From contig NW_021826898.1 in NCBI RefSeq assembly GCF_006345805.1, positions 1-11,770 on the forward strand: 11,770 nucleotides of DNA, read 5' to 3'. Under the pieces are notes generated by a model. The model was not told the DNA's origin, did not search any database, and saw nothing but the letters and a program-made list of their open reading frames with translations. Below are positions 1,631 to 11,627 of the stretch, one piece after another. Both the position numbers and the translations under genes were made by a program. Within the stretch, counting starts at the first letter, position 1. Every line of letters begins with the position of its first letter. This DNA is from Octopus sinensis (Eukaryota).

Positions 1631-1968
1631 AGATACGGTTTTGTAGTAAGAACTTTACTTCCCAACCACATCGTTTTGAGTTCAGTCCCACAGGGTGACA
1701 CATTGGGTAGGTGTCTTTTACTATAGCTTCAGGTCTTGGAATCGATTTTGTCGATGGAAACTGAACGAAGCCCGTAGTATATATATGTGTGTGTGTTTGA
1801 CCCATATCACCGCTTGACAACTGTTTGCTTTTATACGTCCCCGTAACTTAGTAGTTCGGTAAAGGAAACGGATGGAAGAAGGCTTAAAAACTGAGTACTA
1901 GCGTCGGTTTTCAAGGCGTAGCTCTAGCATAGTTACACTCCAATGACTGAAACAACTAAAACATAAGA
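1631..1968 (+). mobile_element. Diverged tRNA-derived SINE, octopus OK/OR-type, near full length
   Basis: B-box-like GAGTTCAGTCCC (1678-1689), degenerate A-box region at ~1638-1650, internal TA/TG microsatellite at ~1778-1797, and a tail ending ...caatgactgaaacaactaaaa. An inverted homologue of the 3' half lies at 1971-2135. Family recognised from memory of abundant octopus SINEs; needs RepeatMasker/Dfam confirmation. Confidence 0.75.
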
Positions 1969-1970
1969 GA

Positions 1971-2190
1971 TTCGACTATGGCCACGCTGGAGTACCGCAT
2001 TCAAATCGAAGCCAGCACTAAGTTTTTTTAAACCTAGTACTTATTCTAACGGTCTCTTATTGCAAAACCGCAGCATTGCGGGGGAAAATCAACGAATTAA
2101 CACCGGTTGTTAAGCTGGGGTGGGAAGAATCACACGCACAAAGACACTGAAAAACATACAAACATATGCACACATGTACATACGTACATA
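1971..2190 (-). mobile_element. 3' half of the same SINE family, inverted, ending in its internal microsatellite
   Basis: ggccacgctggagtaccgc, cctagtacttattctaacggtctctt and ggttgttaagctggggtggg are reverse-complement homologues of the SINE 3' body (compare 1800-1960 and 11512-11627). Confidence 0.7.
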
Positions 2191-2207
2191 TATATATATA
2201 TATATAT

Positions 2208-2935
2208 ATATAAATTAACAATTGAGGATAAAATCTTTAAAAGAAATTATCAGTAGTCAGCGTGAAAAACCTCGTAAGAGAAAAAATCCGTAAATTCCTC
2301 CTCTTTGAAAATATTCATTTATATTATATTGAGGGTACTACTATTCGTAGATACCAACACGCTAAGAGGGACCAATGCGGTCAAAACTACTAAAAATAAA
2401 CAAAATTTTACCGAATGCAAAACTTCAAAACACATCATTTTAAAAAAGAATTCAGTTACATATCACATGTGATTTCGCATTTAATGCAGAATATGCATTT
2501 CATGTTCGTCAGTGCAACAACTCAAGAAATATAAGAAAAAACATAACATTACAACTCGATAGCCAACCGTAGAATTCGTCGTAGCTTGTACGAATGTTTA
2601 TCCTTACATATCTATGAAAATGGCGGGCTTTTTCGCAATGCATTTCGGTAAAAAATTGCCTAGTCGGAATAAAAATCAGTATTGAACTATTCCGGTGAAA
2701 AATATAAATTAACAATTGAGGATAAAATATTTAAAAGAAATTATCAGTAGTCAGCGTGAAAAACCTCGTAAGAGAAAAAATCCGTAAATTCTTCCTCTTT
2801 GAAAATATTCATTTATATTATATTGAGGGTACTACTATTCGTAGATACCAACACGCTAAGAGGGACCAATGCGGTCAAAACTACTAAAAATAAACAAAAT
2901 GTTACTGAATGCAAAACTTCAAAACACATCATTTT
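2208..2935 (-). repeat. Partial tandem duplication: 234-bp direct repeats, period 494 bp
   Basis: 2208-2441 matches 2702-2935 at constant offset 494, with 4 substitutions seen by eye. Confidence 0.95.
2448..2523 (-). ncRNA. Type I hammerhead ribozyme, copy 1
   Basis: Minus strand reads GAGUU-GUUGCA-CUGACGA-[helix II]-GAAA-UCACAUGUGA-UA^UGUAAC-UG-AAUUC. Helix I GUUGCA/UGUAAC abuts the core; predicted cleavage between 2461 and 2460. Confidence 0.85.
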
Positions 2936-3269
2936 TACCGAAATGCATTGCGAAAAAGCCCGCCATTTTCATAGATATGTAAGGATAAACATTCGTACAA
3001 GCTACGACGAATTCTACGGTTGGCTATCGAGTTTGTAATGTTATGTTTTTTCTTATATTTCTTGAGTTTGTTGCACTGACGAACATGAAATGCATATTCT
3101 GCATTAAATGCGAAATCACATGTGATATGTAACTGAATTCTTTTTTAAAATGATGTGTTTTGAAGTTTTGCATTCGGTAAAATTTTGTTTATTTTTAGTA
3201 GTTTTGACCGCATTGGTCCCTCTTAGCGTGTTGGTATCTACGAATAGTAGTACCCTCAATATAATATAA
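2931..3269 (+). repeat. Inverted duplication of 2320-2656
   Basis: Near-identical reverse complement. It also appears in the ORF track as the shared peptide in 2509-2715(-)/2799-3038(+) and 3116-3562(-). Confidence 0.95.
3064..3140 (+). ncRNA. Type I hammerhead ribozyme, copy 2
   Basis: Helix I GTTGCA 3070-3075/TGTAAC 3128-3133; CTGACGA 3076-3082; helix II 3083-3111 (CAT/ATG and ATGCA/TGCAT, loop TATTC); GAAA 3112-3115; palindrome ATCACATGTGAT 3115-3126; AUA triplet with predicted cleavage at 3127/3128. Confidence 0.85.
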
Positions 3270-3289
3270 TAATATATATATATATATGT

Positions 3290-3373
<84 letters not shown>

Positions 3374-3417
3374 GCAGACAGACAGACAGGTACATACATA
3401 CATATATACATACATAT
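3270..3417. repeat. Compound (TA)n-(TAGA)n-(CAGA)n-(CATA) microsatellite
   Basis: (TAGA)n 3291-3354 grades into (CAGA)n 3355-3388. Confidence 0.95.
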
Positions 3418-5063: not shown

Positions 5064-5447
5064 TAGAAAAATGGAGGTAATCAGATCAGGGTCTATTTGT
5101 AGATATTATTTATAATTACATTTTTTACATATATATCATCATTCGGATTAGCGCTGCTCCCATTCTAGTGGGCTTTTCAAATCAAATCAGTTGTGGGGAG
5201 TTTGAACATTTTATAGTTTCGTAGTAGTGGGTGAGGAGGAAGTGAGACAGAGAAAAAAGTGTGTATGTGTATGTGTGTGTATATGTGTGTGGTGCGTGTG
5301 TGGTGTGTGTGTGTGGGGCGTTATATCTGAGAGTGAAGAAGTGTTATTTCCGTTGGTCTGCTGGACCGCCTGTGGTTTTATAAGAACTTTGGCCGTCCAT
5401 TTCGATGTCACTGAGTGTGTGTTGTGCGTAGGTTGGCCTGGCGAAAT
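5061..5447 (+). repeat. Left arm of the long inverted repeat
   Basis: Reverse complement of 9768-10174. The inner ~120 nt (5325-5442) differ by one substitution; the outer part has small indels and a variable TG tract. Confidence 0.95.
5379..5412 (+). promoter_or_regulatory. Candidate TATA + Inr core promoter for the PLE ORF
   Basis: TATAAGA 5379-5385 with an Inr-like TCACT whose A (5410) lies 31 nt downstream. The first ATG after it is 5491, in strong context (agcATGg). Motif-level evidence only. Confidence 0.3.
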
Positions 5448-6960
5448 AAACAAGACAGAAGCACATCTTCAACAGGGAAATACCAGAAGCATGGAAGATC
5501 TACTCACAGAAACCTGTAGTAAGTTAAATTCACTTCTCTCAAAAATTGATACGCTCTTTGCAAACATTGCTTTAACAATAAATACAATCCAAACACAAAA
5601 TATTCTCTGTAAAAATAATCAAACAAACACAAACTGACAACACAAAACCTTCTGGCGGGACTACCCCAATCACAAAGGACAACAAATGACGAAGAAACAA
5701 AAAACTGACACAAACCAAGAAAAACCTTCAAAACCCCAAGACTGGAACAAACTTCTAAACCAACGCAAATATGCTTATTGGAAAAACATACGCTGTAAGA
5801 ACATAGCCAACATATATCAAAACTGGCGGGACTTGAAGAACCCAATACTCCCTAGAAAATTTCTTATCAAAGAAATAAGGGGTGAAACACTAGAAAGAAA
5901 CAACAATACGTGCAAAACCTAGCCTCTGCCGACTAGAAACGGAAATTTCCCTTCTACAAACACGAAGCACACACAGGAAGATAAGATTAAACAATCGATA
6001 CCGTCATAATGGCCGAGATAACAGAAAGGAACAATAACCAAAACAAAGAAAAAAAACTACAACAATTATGGAAAGAGGATACCGAACGAGAGGAGGAAAG
6101 ATCCAGATTTATGTGGACCAAACAACATGAGTGGTTTTTAAACTACGAAAAGAACTATGGGGAAGAATCAATTATGAAGACAAAAAACTACCAAAACAAA
6201 TGAATAGATACAACAAACCAACACCACAAACATATTGGACTCCCAGACATCAAAATAAGCCCTACCAAACACAAACCAAAATCCTGCTCCTTACACTGCC
6301 GAACCCCCCAATTAACAGATACACAAAATATGAAAGACAACCATCAACCCAAAACCCCACAAAAACAAACACACCAACAGCAAGGCGAGCACAATACATA
6401 CAACCAACAACCTATAACACTTCGAGAGAACAAATAGAATAGGAACAACCACCAACACATAACACTGGACACCCTAAAAGGACACACACATGGAACAATA
6501 TACAAATGGATAGAAATCAACACATAACCTACAACAAACATCAAGGAAATCGAAACCACACAAACACCAACCCCATGCAACCCCACAAATTTCCAAGATG
6601 GATAAAAAACAACTCCCACTATCAATACAATACAAACACAATACATGAACCATCCACCTACCCCAAAGAAACCTGAACCCCAGTAATAAATATTGGCTCA
6701 ACCAACACAGAAGATGGAAGAAAACAACTACCAAAGACAAAACAACACATACAGACCACACAGACCACCCAACTACAAGAAAACCTAAGAACTGAAAATG
6801 GAATTTGAAGACGTAACAACAAAACCCATTTTTTAGGGAGAGGATACTTCAACCATACTCCAGACCCAATACACCAAAAATTCCGGATGAACTCCCAAAA
6901 CACATAGACCCCAAAATAATAAACTTATCTAAAAGAGAACTTGACGAATATGAAATGAAC

Positions 6961-8400
6961 CTACTACTAAAAGGCCTCAAATTTACACCTACACCCACTC
7001 CAAACTTCATAGAACTAAAAAACTGACATAGACAACTTCAGCCGCTACCTCCGCCTTATGGAATTCTTTGAAAATAAAGAAACAGAGAAGATAACTCAAT
7101 CATAAGAAAAAAATCCCACTTCACCCCTTACAAGGGAAGTGACAAACACCTTGACACATTACATAGAAACAATATCCAAATTCCCTCTTCACACACACAA
7201 ATGCAAACAGAATCTCCGCAGAGAGAGAAAAACAAGCCCTACAAAAACTGAAAAATGACAAATCAATCGTTATAAAAAGAAGCTGACAAAGGTGGAGCAA
7301 TAGTAATTATGGACACAGATTACTACAAAGAAAAGATACTAGAGTTACTGAACAACCAGACATATTACAAAGAGGAACCAACACCACCGGAGAAAACAAC
7401 AATAAGAAAAATTAGAACTTTAGTCAATGAATATCAGGACTCCTTTACAGATAAGGAGGAAGACTATCTATGCAACTCACAAACCAAAGAAAGCAACTTT
7501 TATGGATTACCTAAAATTCAAAAAGCTCGGAAATACAGAGAGCCATAAAGGAACAGAGGAACCACTACATAAGAGTACAAAGACCTGCAGACCTCACGAT
7601 GAGACCAATAGTGGCAGGACCCCAGGCACCAACACACAACTAAGCCACTTCATAGATATACTCCTCAAACCTCTATGCCCACAGATTCCAAGCTACATAA
7701 GGGATGACATAGACTTCCTCACACACATTCCAAATACAGTCCCGAAAAAACACCATACTTGCAAGCTTTGATGTCACAAATCTATACACAAACATACCAC
7801 ACACCCTAGGTCTAGAAGCTATAAAACAATCAATAGAAAAATACAGAGAACTTATAGACGAACGCTTCAAGACAAACTTTATCACCCAAGCCACCCAACT
7901 AATACTAGAAGAAAAAAACATTCTCATTCAACAAACAAGACATACCGACAGATAAAAGGCACGGCTATGGGTAAAAAATTCGCACCTTCAAATGCCAACC
8001 TGGTGATGGGCTTCTGGAGAAAAAACTATATGACGAAATAGGGAAAGTCTTCGAACACGACTTCAGAGAAGACATCAAGAAAAAGTGGAAACGCCTCGAT
8101 GACTGTTTCATCTTTTGGAACAGATCAGAAGAGGACCTACAAACATTCCACAACATCCTCAATACGCTGCACCCATCTATCAATTTCACAATAGATACCA
8201 GCCACAACGAACTTCCCTTCCTAGACATCAACATCAAAATACACAACTCCATCGGCACAACAGACATCCACTACAAAAAAACTGACACACATCAATACTT
8301 AAATTTCCACTCCTGCCACCCATCCCACACAAAAAGAAACATCCCATATAGTATGGCACGACGAATATGTAGCATAGTAACTGATTCACAAATACGATTA
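6961..8400 (+). other. Reverse transcriptase domain and thumb (frameshifted)
   Basis: PLE-type RT motifs listed above; frame 1 is open from ~8012 to 8643. Confidence 0.9.
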
Positions 8401-8749
8401 ATAAGACTAGATGAACTCAAAAGCTTCCTCCTAGAGCAAAAATACCCCCTTAAACTAATAGAAAATGGAATCACAAGAGCATTAAAACTAGACATCACAC
8501 AACTCAGGACACCCAAAACAAAAACAAAGAAAAACACTATCCCTTTTATAAACACACACAACCCTGGAGTTACCAACATCTTCCAAACCATACATTCAAA
8601 CCTACCAATAGCCTTACAGAGCCCCAAAATGAAAACATATTAAACAAATATAGCATAAAAAACAGTAGACGACAGGACAAAAAACAAAAAAAAACATAAC
8701 AAGAGCGAAATTCTCTTCAGAAACTAAAACGGAATTCTTTGCAAAAGAG

Positions 8750-9147
8750 TGCGGAGATGGTAGATGTGGGACCTGCAGCAACCCCACCTACAAATACATA
8801 GAGAGCAACAGAGAGACAAGATTTAAAAATGGTGTCATATTCAAAGTAAATGCAGATATGAACTGCAAGACGCGCAGAACGTCATATACTGCATAACCTG
8901 CCCCACGTGCAAGGAGAATTACGTAGGTGAAACTGGTAATTCTTTGTGCCAGCGAGCCAGGATCACCGACAACATATCGGCAGGAGAAGAACTACGCAAA
9001 ATACCACTAAGCACACACCTAGCTACATGTGGAGAAGGAAAATTTAAGATATTTCCCTTCTACAAGTGTCCGAAGAACGACACCCCCTTCAGGAGGAATA
9101 TGGAAAAACATTTCATAGCTAAGTTCTCCCCCAAATTAAATGGCTGA
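8750..9147 (+). other. C-x4-C-x2-C linker motif plus GIY-YIG endonuclease
   Basis: CGDGRCGTC at 8750-8776; VIY..CPTC..YVG at 8878-8940; downstream R, HLATC, E and terminal LN residues typical of PLE endonucleases. Confidence 0.85.
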
Positions 9148-9429
9148 AACTTACTCAACATACATTGAAGGACAAATCTGTGTGTGTGTAGATGTGTGTA
9201 TTGCCTGTTATATACATCATATTATATTATTATCTTTATAATTCACTTCCATCTTTACCTTTAATTGTCACTTTAATTTAACTTTCCTATGATATACAAT
9301 TTTCAAGATGGTATAATTTGGTTGTTCATTTTGAACCGATAAAAAGGTTTTTTCAAATATTTTATGTATAAGTCTGTGTGTGTGTATATATATGTGTGGT
9401 ATAAATATCAACACACAAAAATATTTTTT

Positions 9430-9767: not shown

Positions 9768-9923
9768 ATTTGCCAGGCCAACCTACGCACAACACACACT
9801 CAGTGACATCGAAATGGACAGCCAAAGTTCTTATAAAACCACAGGCGGTCCAGCAGACCAACGGAAATAACACTTCTTCACTCTCAGATATAAACGCGCA
9901 CACACACACACACACACACGCAC

Positions 9924-10262: not shown

Positions 10263-10676
10263 ATATCCGTAAAATATAAGAGAGTTAACGTTCAATAGGT
10301 CAACTCTAGTGCTAGAAAATATTCTTGTATAGCCGCCGACGCTACCTCCACATAGAATAGCACTACCCTCAACGTAAGGAAATGGAAATACAACTAAAAA
10401 ATAGATTAATGTTGTACAATTGTTTCTTATCAAATATTAATATGCAAATTATACTCACATATATAGCTATAAATCATCAGCAACATTTGTCATTGATACA
10501 ATTATCAGACCTACACGGGCGACGATTACCCATGCGGTCTATGTGCTAGCTCGTTTGGTGTTAAACCAATGGCATTATTAAATTAATATCTAATTTTTCA
10601 CCCTCATTTTTGAATATATATATATATGTACGCGCACACACGCACACAGGCACACACACACACACACACCACATAC

Positions 10677-10834
10677 CTTCTTTCATGTTTAATCCACCAA
10701 ATCCACTCATAAAACTTTGGTTGGCACGAAGGTAGAATAAAACACATTTTCCCAAATAGCGGCGTAGTGGGATAGAACCCGTATTCACATAATTCCAATG
10801 CATGCTTCTTGACCATACAATCCTCCATGTGCAC
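10677..10834 (-). mobile_element. 5' half (tRNA-like head) of the OK/OR-type SINE
   Basis: Minus strand: A-box-like GGATTGTATGGTC (10811-10823) and B-box GGGTTCTATCCC (10769-10780), then ...gagtggatttggtggattaaacatgaaagaag, homologous to 1640-1775. It continues into a TG/TA microsatellite at 10615-10670. Confidence 0.7.
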
Positions 10835-11504: not shown

Positions 11505-11627
11505 TTTTCTCTTTTCTTTCACTTGTTTCAACCTTTGGGCAGTGGCCATGCTGGAGCACGGTTTTGAAGGATTTAGTCGGAAAAACAAACCAGTTCTTAT
11601 TCCTTTTTAAGCCTTGTACTTATTTTA
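11505..11627 (-). mobile_element. 3'-terminal fragment of the OK/OR-type SINE
   Basis: acttgtttca..ggccatgctggagcac..tttagtcg..ttcttattc..aagccttgtacttatt is homologous to 1971-2047 and to the reverse complement of 1880-1965. Confidence 0.7.

What the first reader, a model, noticed from the sequence alone, without database searches (positions are those of the whole stretch)
2448..3140. Two divergently oriented type I hammerhead ribozymes in a non-coding mobile unit
The sequence shows a complete HHR core twice, on opposite strands: helix I GUUGCA/UGUAAC, CUGACGA, hairpin helix II, GAAA and an AUA cleavage triplet. Helix I extends through a bulge (GAGUU/AAUUC), as in natural type I HHRs with helix I-loop II contacts. 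It is established that PLEs and their non-autonomous retrozyme derivatives carry type I HHRs. The inference is that this is a cephalopod HHR retroelement family that protein-based annotation would miss.
Basis: partly seen in the sequence, partly recalled or inferred. Interest (0 to 1): 0.85.

Follow-up and report, generated by a model that had tools for sequence, protein, structure and literature searches.

The report
Hammerhead-like motif in octopus Penelope-type repeat
A small non-coding repeat in what looks like octopus DNA carries a near-canonical self-cleaving hammerhead RNA motif and is laid out like an insertion made by Penelope-like retrotransposons; this is an expected, already known kind of element, and its activity and copy number remain unproven.

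Summary
A type I hammerhead (HHR) motif lies at 3064-3140 (+), with a near-identical copy at 2523-2448 (-). All core bases, three helices and an AUA cleavage triplet are present. About 0.0025 such motifs are expected per window by chance, so the match alone is not proof in a multi-Gb genome.

The context supports it. The motif sits in an ORF-less 494-nt unit arranged as a partial tandem plus a head-to-head inverted 5'-truncated copy, with both outer ends in (TA)n. [quoted passage not shown] Rfam finds no hammerhead here, but it also misses the once-per-unit PLE hammerhead-like motif in a related tandem PLE array.

No other genomic copy could be reached, so family status, covariation and cleavage are untested. 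This locus does not meet the operational retrozyme criterion of two HHRs in tandem.

Verdict: probably a PLE-mobilised, retrozyme-like non-autonomous insertion, a new member of a known kind. Interest is modest.

The parts
3064..3140 (+). Type I hammerhead-like motif, + copy. Helix I 3064-3075 / 3128-3140 (6 bp, U3134 bulge, 6 bp). Core CUGACGA 3076-3082. Helix II 3083-3111 (A.C at its base, 3 bp, GA/AA internal loop, 6 bp, 5-nt loop). GAA 3112-3114. 12-nt palindromic helix III 3115-3126. A17 at 3127. Predicted cleavage at 3127|3128.
   Evidence: Sequence read; descriptor hit; MFE fold equals the HHR junction; chance estimate.
2448..2523 (-). The same motif, - copy, with one U fewer in distal helix I. 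Predicted cleavage at 2461|2460.
2442..2654 (-). Segment B of the 494-nt unit (HHR sense = - strand). Carries the HHR at its 3' end.
   Evidence: Inverted repeats I1 and I4; alignment.
2208..2441 (-). Segment A', the downstream copy (pseudo-LTR-like direct repeat). Its 3' end runs into (TA)n.
   Evidence: Direct repeat D10 with spacing 494; 4 substitutions relative to the other copy.
2655..2701 (-). Segment L', a 47-nt single-copy linker that closes the 494-nt unit (A' to L' to B).
2702..2935 (-). Segment A', the upstream copy of the partial tandem. It is 98.3% identical to 2208-2441.
2932..3269 (+). Inverted, 5'-truncated copy (B plus the first 129 nt of A'). It is joined head-to-head to the upstream A' through a 4-nt TTTT overlap, and its outer end runs into (TA)n/(GATA)n.
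2188..2212 (.). (TA)n microsatellite at the left edge; presumed target.
   Evidence: TRF; flank printed.
3270..3416 (.). (TA)n followed by (GATA)n at the right edge; presumed target.
   Evidence: TRF; flank printed.
5450..9147 (+). Neighbouring decayed Penelope-like element: ORF1-like region, reverse transcriptase pieces, and a GIY-YIG piece at 8827-9144. It shows the required machinery exists in this genome, but this copy is broken by frameshifts and stops.

Best explanation
The block 2208-3269 is one insertion of an ORF-less, 494-nt, AT-rich repeat unit that carries a PLE-style type I hammerhead. It is a non-autonomous derivative or passenger of Penelope-like elements, the kind called a 'non-LTR retrozyme' when tandem.

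Inferred mechanism:
1. A multimeric or circular RNA of the unit was reverse-transcribed by a PLE RT / GIY-YIG endonuclease supplied in trans, at a break in a (TA)n microsatellite.
2. Each 3'-OH primed on a UA-rich stretch of the RNA, which gives two different outer junctions.
3. One cDNA ran for more than one unit (A'-L'-B-A').
4. The two cDNAs met 5'-to-5' and joined at a TTTT microhomology. This gives a partial tandem plus a head-to-head inverted 5'-truncated copy.

In source arrays the hammerhead would cut multimeric transcripts into 494-nt monomers. It would probably act as a dimer through its 12-nt palindromic helix III. A host RNA ligase could circularise the monomers.

This particular locus has only one motif per strand and is most likely a dead-on-arrival copy.

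What is shown: the motif, the architecture, the nearby PLE and the octopus affinity. What is inferred: the RNA template, trans-mobilisation, cleavage and circles.
For: - All invariant HHR core positions and three helices are present, and the MFE fold is the HHR junction.
- The chance expectation is 0.0025 per window. Decoys gave 0 hits.
- The unit closes at 494 nt with no ORF.
- In HHR sense the layout is [inverted 5'-truncated copy][upstream repeat A'][L'-B with HHR][downstream repeat A'], with both ends in (TA)n. This matches the typical PLE arrangement and the reported microsatellite insertion bias of PLEs ((TA)n is named there for the Naiad clade; PMC8557442). It matches only if the sense strand is the one on which the HHR reads correctly.
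- Dual HHRs 100-700 bp apart on opposite strands are reported for PLE remnants, as are a long helix II and a palindromic helix III (PMC4209133).
- A decayed PLE lies 2 kb away.
- Related PLE loci carry minimal-HHR-like motifs matched by my descriptor. Their helix II bases are U.U, A-U or A.A, so a non-G-C base pair is not unusual among these motifs.
- An experimentally cleaving axolotl retrozyme HHR has a U.U mismatch at the base of helix II (PMC7229834).
- The circular 494-nt monomer folds better than shuffles: z = -3.69 in sense and -2.37 in antisense.
- GC content is 32%, as in animal retrozymes (PMC7229834).
Against: - No second genomic copy was found, so mobility, family conservation and covariation are untested.
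- The A.C at 10.1/11.1 departs from the highly conserved G10.1-C11.1 pair (PMC4209133) and may cripple catalysis.
- Rfam hammerhead models do not score it. This is weakened by the same miss on the L006 array motif.
- The fold energy of the motif is ordinary (z = -0.53).
- The unit shows no sequence similarity to the neighbouring PLE or to four sampled octopus PLE loci.
- The 494-nt unit is slightly above the 150-450 nt range reported for animal retrozymes.
- The upstream A' differs from the other two copies by 4 substitutions while those two are identical. A single clean insertion event does not predict this.
Confidence: 0.55

Rival explanations
1. Chance hammerhead-like string inside a local rearrangement. 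A piece of unrelated AT-rich non-coding DNA was duplicated in tandem and inverted by replication slippage or template switching in a microsatellite-rich region. The HHR resemblance has no function.
For: - About 0.2 chance motifs per Mb are expected, so hundreds per cephalopod genome (arithmetic).
- A.C mismatch at 10.1/11.1.
- No Rfam hit.
- Ordinary fold energy.
- No other copy found.
- The region is packed with microsatellites.
Against: - The probability that a chance motif falls within this particular 494 nt of unique sequence is about 1e-4 (arithmetic).
- The motif's strand agrees with the sense predicted by the PLE-type layout (PMC8557442).
- The palindromic helix III and long helix II are features outside the descriptor that match PLE HHRs (PMC4209133).
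- PLE sequences and other HHR-type motifs occur in the same window and in related loci, against 0 in decoys.
Confidence: 0.2
2. Not a separate non-autonomous family. It is the terminal (pLTR/UTR) part of an autonomous octopus PLE family: 5'-truncated or internally deleted copies produced in one PLE insertion.
For: - Most PLE min-HHRs in genomes are single motifs ascribed to truncated PLEs (PMC4209133).
- In the intact array L006 the HHR-like motif sits in the short spacer after the endonuclease stop.
- In L002 an HHR-like motif lies about 200 nt from a (TA)n edge, a geometry like that seen here.
Against: - The partial tandem closes the unit at 494 nt with no ORF remnant: A' runs into L' and then B.
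- There is no similarity to the window's PLE, to L001, L002, L004 or L005, or to L006 and L007.
- An internally deleted PLE is in practice also a non-autonomous element, so this rival differs mainly in ancestry.
Confidence: 0.15
3. A foldback/MITE-type DNA transposon, or an assembly artefact (a palindromic chimeric long read), creates the inverted arms. The RNA-based reading is then unnecessary.
For: - The arms are 336/338 nt and identical apart from two homopolymer indels, which is typical of very young palindromes or of long-read artefacts.
- The flanks are TA-rich, as for TA-targeting DNA transposons.
Against: - The direct repeat A' (2208-2318 = 2702-2812) extends 111 nt beyond the left arm. 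A simple foldback or a read palindrome does not explain this.
- The upstream A' carries 4 substitutions, so the three copies are not one mechanical duplication.
- An artefact would remove only the second copy, not the motif or the partial tandem.
Confidence: 0.07

Closest known systems
Minimal type I hammerheads of metazoan Penelope-like elements and their dispersed solo copies (Cervera & de la Pena 2014, PMC4209133)
   Same: - Type I topology.
- Long helix II.
- Palindromic helix III / loop 3, implying action as a dimer.
- An unpaired or odd nucleotide after A9.
- Occurrence as single or opposite-strand paired motifs 100-700 bp apart near PLE remnants.
- Not recognised by standard models.
   Different: - Helix III here is a real 4-bp hairpin within a 12-nt palindrome, rather than 0-2 bp.
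- Helix I is long (6+6 bp).
- Helix II is 29 nt with an internal loop.
- 10.1/11.1 is A.C instead of the conserved G-C.
- The motif is not inside a recognisable PLE.
Animal non-LTR retrozymes (Cervera & de la Pena 2020, PMC7229834; Li et al. 2026 preprint, 10.64898/2026.07.22.740005)
   Same: - ORF-less, low-GC unit of a few hundred nt carrying a type I HHR.
- A more-than-unit-length copy.
- Co-occurrence with PLEs.
- Predicted compact fold of the circular monomer.
   Different: - Only 1.47 direct units and one HHR per strand at this locus.
- The 494-nt unit is above the usual 150-450 nt.
- No tandem array, no circRNA evidence and no further copies are available.
Axolotl HHR_Amex2 and newt satellite hammerheads
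   Same: - A weak point at the base of helix II (U.U there, A.C here).
- Reliance on a palindromic helix III for dimeric cleavage.
   Different: - Those have conserved loop 1-loop 2 contacts and a 4-bp helix II.
- They occur in very large tandem arrays.
- Their cleavage is demonstrated.
Plant LTR retrozymes
   Same: Non-autonomous, HHR-bearing, circRNA-based retroelements.
   Different: Plant retrozymes have type III HHRs, true LTRs, a PBS and PPT, high GC and mobilisation by Gypsy elements. None of these apply here.

Membership tests
Hammerhead ribozyme, type I | Invariant core: C3 U4 G5 A6 N7 G8 A9, G12 A13 A14, A15.1-U16.1, and H17 not G | tested here: met
   3076-3082 CUGACGA, 3112-3114 GAA, A3115-U3126, A3127.
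Hammerhead ribozyme, type I | Three helices around the core, with helix I open (5' and 3' ends in helix I) | tested here: met
   The MFE structure of 3054-3142 is this junction.
Hammerhead ribozyme, type I | Watson-Crick 10.1-11.1 pair, normally G-C | tested here: not met
   A3083 opposite C3111. The descriptor hits only when this pair is not required.
Hammerhead ribozyme, type I | Match to curated covariance models (Rfam Hammerhead_1 and relatives) | tested here: not met
   No hit at gathering score or at E<=10. As a control, the once-per-unit motif of the PLE array L006 is missed too, so this test has low power for PLE-type motifs.
Hammerhead ribozyme, type I | Loop 1-loop 2 tertiary contact | not testable with these tools
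   There is only a 1-2 nt bulge in helix I, and helix II is much longer than the canonical 4 bp. There is no sequence signature to check.
Hammerhead ribozyme, type I | Compensatory changes in the helices among homologues | not testable with these tools
   The only copies are two near-identical arms. No other copy could be retrieved.
Hammerhead ribozyme, type I | Site-specific self-cleavage | not testable with these tools
   Requires a bench assay.
PLE-type minimal hammerhead | Palindromic 15.2-16.2 and loop 3 (capacity to dimerise) | tested here: met
   AUCACAUGUGAU is a perfect 12-nt palindrome. Criterion taken from PMC4209133.
PLE-type minimal hammerhead | Extra nucleotide between A9 and 10.1, followed by G10.1-C11.1 | tested here: not met
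   An A follows A9, but the next pair is C-G and a C is left opposite. Related loci show U.U, A-U, A.A and A+G-C variants.
PLE-type minimal hammerhead | Located in a PLE pseudo-LTR or in a truncated PLE remnant | tested here: inconclusive
   The PLE-style partial tandem plus inverted copy in (TA)n is present, but there is no sequence similarity to any PLE sampled.
Animal non-LTR retrozyme | At least two consecutive tandem units, each with a complete HHR | tested here: not met
   There are 1.47 direct units and one HHR per strand. TRF reports no 494-nt array. Criterion taken from the 2026 preprint.
Animal non-LTR retrozyme | Short ORF-less unit with low GC and no LTR/PBS/PPT | tested here: met
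   494 nt, 31.8% GC; the longest open frame is 64 aa and has no relatives.
Animal non-LTR retrozyme | Many genomic copies and expression as linear and circular RNA | not testable with these tools
   No cephalopod genome or transcriptome can be searched by DNA here. 82 kb of sampled octopus loci held no copy.
Penelope-like element (autonomous) | ORF with a reverse transcriptase and a GIY-YIG endonuclease | tested here: not met
   None in 2208-3269. The separate element at 5450-9147 does have them, in decayed form.

The most novel reading that the evidence does not exclude
The 494-nt unit represents a so far undescribed, cephalopod-specific retrozyme family. Its atypical hammerhead (A.C at 10.1/11.1, 29-nt helix II, 12-nt palindromic helix III) is nevertheless active as a dimer and yields abundant ~0.5-kb circular RNAs in octopus tissues.
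Probability: 0.2. Interest if true: 0.45.

Novelty: new member of a known kind. Interest (0 to 1): 0.3.

Why it matters
If confirmed genome-wide, it would add cephalopods to the animals known to carry PLE-dependent hammerhead repeats. I found no open-access paper that describes such elements in octopus. Only 235 Rfam Hammerhead_1 hits are reported for the giant squid (PMC6962438).

It would also give a natural test case for how much a non-Watson-Crick 10.1/11.1 pair is tolerated.

In practice it shows that curated covariance models miss PLE-type hammerhead motifs, so such repeats stay unannotated. It does not open a new question, because the association between PLEs, hammerheads and retrozymes is established.

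Tried and rejected
- Rfam scans of the whole window, of 1 kb and of 116 nt found no hammerhead. I judged this uninformative after the same models missed the L006 PLE array motif.
- I searched the protein collection with the 64-aa open frame of segment A, hoping for spurious gene calls on other copies. Nothing was found.
- I scanned JGI metagenomes, bacterial/archaeal genomes and IMG/VR with CTGANGA-N{15,40}-GAAATCACATGTGATA. There was one hit in each of the first two collections, both chance matches in bacterial coding DNA without helix I, and none in viral contigs.
- BLAST of the unit against the rest of the window and against 7 fetched loci showed no similarity.
- I attempted an alignment of five PLE HHR-like motifs to build a covariance model. 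MAFFT misaligned the helices, so the model was abandoned.
- No tRNA or SINE head was found.
- TRF did not report a 494-nt period.
- The second HHR-like motif at 10486-10409 does not fold as a hammerhead on its own. I left it as a note.
- Pfam scans of the RT pieces were negative because the pieces are too short. Only the GIY-YIG piece scored, and below threshold. PLE identity was instead established by homology.

Full report
**Observation.** The + strand at 3064-3140 reads GAGUUUGUUGCA-CUGACGA-[helix II]-GAA-AUCACAUGUGAU-A|UGUAACUGAAUUC.

- All invariant hammerhead positions are present: C3-A9 at 3076-3082, G12-A14 at 3112-3114, A15.1-U16.1 at 3115/3126, and A17 at 3127.
- Helix I has 6 bp, a one-base bulge (U3134), then 6 more bp.
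- Helix II is 29 nt: CAU/AUG, a GA/AA internal loop, AAUGCA/UGCAUU, and a UAUUC loop.
- Helix III is a 4-bp hairpin with a CAUG loop, and the whole of it is a 12-nt palindrome.
- The MFE fold of 3054-3142 is exactly this three-way junction, although its energy is ordinary (z = -0.53).
- A second copy lies on the - strand at 2523-2448.

**Chance.** My descriptor requires the core, helix I >=5/6 bp, helix II >=3 bp and helix III >=3 bp.

- It finds only these two sites in the window, and only if the 10.1/11.1 pair is not required.
- 3000 simulated windows with the same dinucleotide transitions gave 0.0023-0.0027 hits per window.
- Reversed or complement-only decoys of 144 kb of the window plus fetched loci gave none.
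- That rate corresponds to roughly 0.2 chance hits per Mb, so the motif alone would not be decisive in a multi-Gb genome.
- The two copies are not independent. They are arms of one inverted duplication, 336 and 338 nt long, and differ only by two 1-nt T-run indels. One indel shortens distal helix I in the - copy.

**Anatomy of the block 2208-3269.** Repeat analysis gives, read in HHR sense (the - strand for the left part):

- an inverted, 5'-truncated copy B-A'(partial) at 2932-3269 (+ strand);
- joined head-to-head through a TTTT overlap to A' (2935-2702), then L' (2701-2655), then B with the hammerhead (2654-2442), then A' (2441-2208).

The direct repeat spacing is 494 nt, so the unit (B 213 + A' 234 + L' 47) is closed and contains no ORF. 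The longest stop-free frame is 64 aa and has no relatives.

Both outer ends run into (TA)n, followed by (GATA)n on the right. The two outer junctions fall at different UA-rich places in the unit.

The upstream A' differs from the downstream A' by 4 substitutions. The inverted copy is identical to the downstream one.

**Context.**

- The window is AT-rich and full of microsatellites.
- At about 5450-9147 (+) lies a frameshifted Penelope-like element. Its stop-free pieces, searched separately, show reverse-transcriptase motifs and a GIY-YIG piece (Pfam E = 6e-4, below threshold).
- The 222-aa piece finds 55 relatives carrying RVT_1, HTH_animal and GIY-YIG domains. The highest identities, 76-80% over about 41% of the query, are to Octopus bimaculoides proteins. 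O. sinensis and bivalve proteins follow at lower identity.
- At the DNA level, 6189-9149 is 82% identical over 3 kb to an O. bimaculoides locus.
- A cephalopod, probably octopod, origin is therefore supported.

**Comparison with PLE hammerheads.**

- The literature describes PLE insertions as partial tandems forming pseudo-LTRs, often with an inverted 5'-truncated copy next to the upstream pseudo-LTR, and reports an insertion bias for microsatellites ((TA)n is named there for the Naiad clade). HHRs sit in the pseudo-LTRs (PMC8557442).
- It also describes PLE 'min-HHRs' with a long helix II, an extra nucleotide after A9 and a palindromic helix III. They are frequently solo or paired on opposite strands 100-700 bp apart, and have low activity unless dimeric (PMC4209133).
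- The block matches that architecture only if the sense strand is the one on which the hammerhead reads correctly.
- In fetched relatives, a relaxed descriptor found HHR-type motifs as follows:
  - once per 3716-bp unit in a head-to-tail PLE array (L006), 84 nt after the endonuclease stop;
  - twice in L007;
  - once each in O. bimaculoides L005 and O. sinensis L002.
- That is 13 hits against 0 in decoys over 134 kb.
- Their helix II bases are U.U, A-U, A.A or A+G-C, so a non-G-C base is not exceptional among these descriptor-matched motifs.
- An axolotl retrozyme hammerhead with a U.U mismatch there still cleaves, better as a dimer (PMC7229834).
- Rfam misses the L006 motif just as it misses the window motif, so the Rfam negative carries little weight.

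**Other copies.** None could be obtained.

- The protein collection holds no spurious ORF from the unit.
- Pattern scans of JGI metagenomes, prokaryotic genomes and IMG/VR gave only two chance bacterial matches.
- 82 kb of octopus loci and 40 kb of other mollusc-like loci show no similarity to the unit.
- No tool here searches cephalopod genomes by DNA. Copy number, conservation and covariation, which are the decisive tests, remain open.

**Mechanism (most likely, confidence about 0.55).** The block is a PLE-mobilised, ORF-less, hammerhead-bearing repeat.

- Inferred steps:
  1. A multimeric or circular unit RNA served as template.
  2. Target-primed reverse transcription started from both 3'-OH ends of a break in (TA)n, each priming on a UA-rich tract.
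  3. One cDNA ran for more than a unit.
  4. The two cDNAs joined 5'-to-5' at a microhomology.
- In source arrays the hammerhead, dimerising through helix III, would release 494-nt monomers that a host ligase could circularise. The predicted circular monomer folds better than shuffles (z = -3.69 in sense, -2.37 in antisense).
- This locus has one motif per strand and cannot itself yield monomers.
- The 4 substitutions in the upstream A' suggest either a heterogeneous multimeric template or later conversion between the inverted arms.

**Rivals.**

1. A chance motif in a local tandem/inverted rearrangement (0.2).
2. Terminal fragments of an autonomous octopus PLE rather than a separate family (0.15).
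3. A foldback/MITE element or a palindromic assembly artefact (0.07). This does not explain the direct repeat extending 111 nt beyond the left arm.

**Classification.**

- It works like a PLE-type hammerhead repeat.
- As a hammerhead it meets the core and helix criteria but fails the conserved 10.1-11.1 pair and the curated models.
- As a retrozyme locus it fails the requirement of two consecutive HHR units, while meeting the unit properties (ORF-less, 32% GC).
- It is not an autonomous PLE.
- I rate it a probable new member of a known kind. Cephalopod genomes are already known to hold PLEs and Rfam-detectable hammerheads (PMC8557442; PMC6962438). I found no open-access description of an octopus retrozyme.
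- Interest is modest (0.3).

Noticed in passing
window 5303-5445 and 9769-9911: Inverted arms of 143 nt, 96% complementary, that continue outward into (GT)n and (CA)n. They bracket the decayed Penelope-like element and may be inverted pseudo-LTR-like ends or a duplicated target. They have no match in the fetched loci.
   Followed up: partly
window 5450-9147 (+): Near full-length but frameshifted PLE with an ORF1-like part, RT pieces and a GIY-YIG piece. It is 82% identical over 3 kb to an O. bimaculoides copy that is itself flanked by (TA)n. I found no hammerhead motif in its own flanks, unlike the related array L006.
   Followed up: partly
window 10409-10486 (-): A second hammerhead-like motif: helix I 6/6, CUGAUGA, GAA, palindromic helix III ACAAUUGU, and H17 = A. 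Its helix II is 47 nt and folds poorly. It sits in a ~340-nt block between (CA)n and (TA)n. It may be a decayed PLE-type motif or chance.
   Followed up: partly
window 1642-1970, 1970-2140 (inverted), 10677-10781, 11507-11627: A dispersed SINE-like repeat, 68-74% similar to sequences in O. sinensis (L002 2933-3305) and O. bimaculoides (L001).
   Followed up: no
L006 1-18835 (ENA ERZ26168041): A head-to-tail array of intact-looking PLE units with a period of about 3716 bp. Each unit has one minimal hammerhead-like motif 84 nt after the endonuclease stop. Rfam models miss it.
   Followed up: partly
L007 7041-7103 (-): A SECIS_1 hit of 45.8 bits, above the gathering score, next to a called 203-aa gene in a mollusc-like contig.
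   Followed up: no
L002 10611-10655 (+): The O. sinensis PLE remnant carries a compact hammerhead-like motif with an A.A mismatch at the base of helix II, about 200 nt before a (TA)n tract. This geometry resembles that of the window element.
   Followed up: partly
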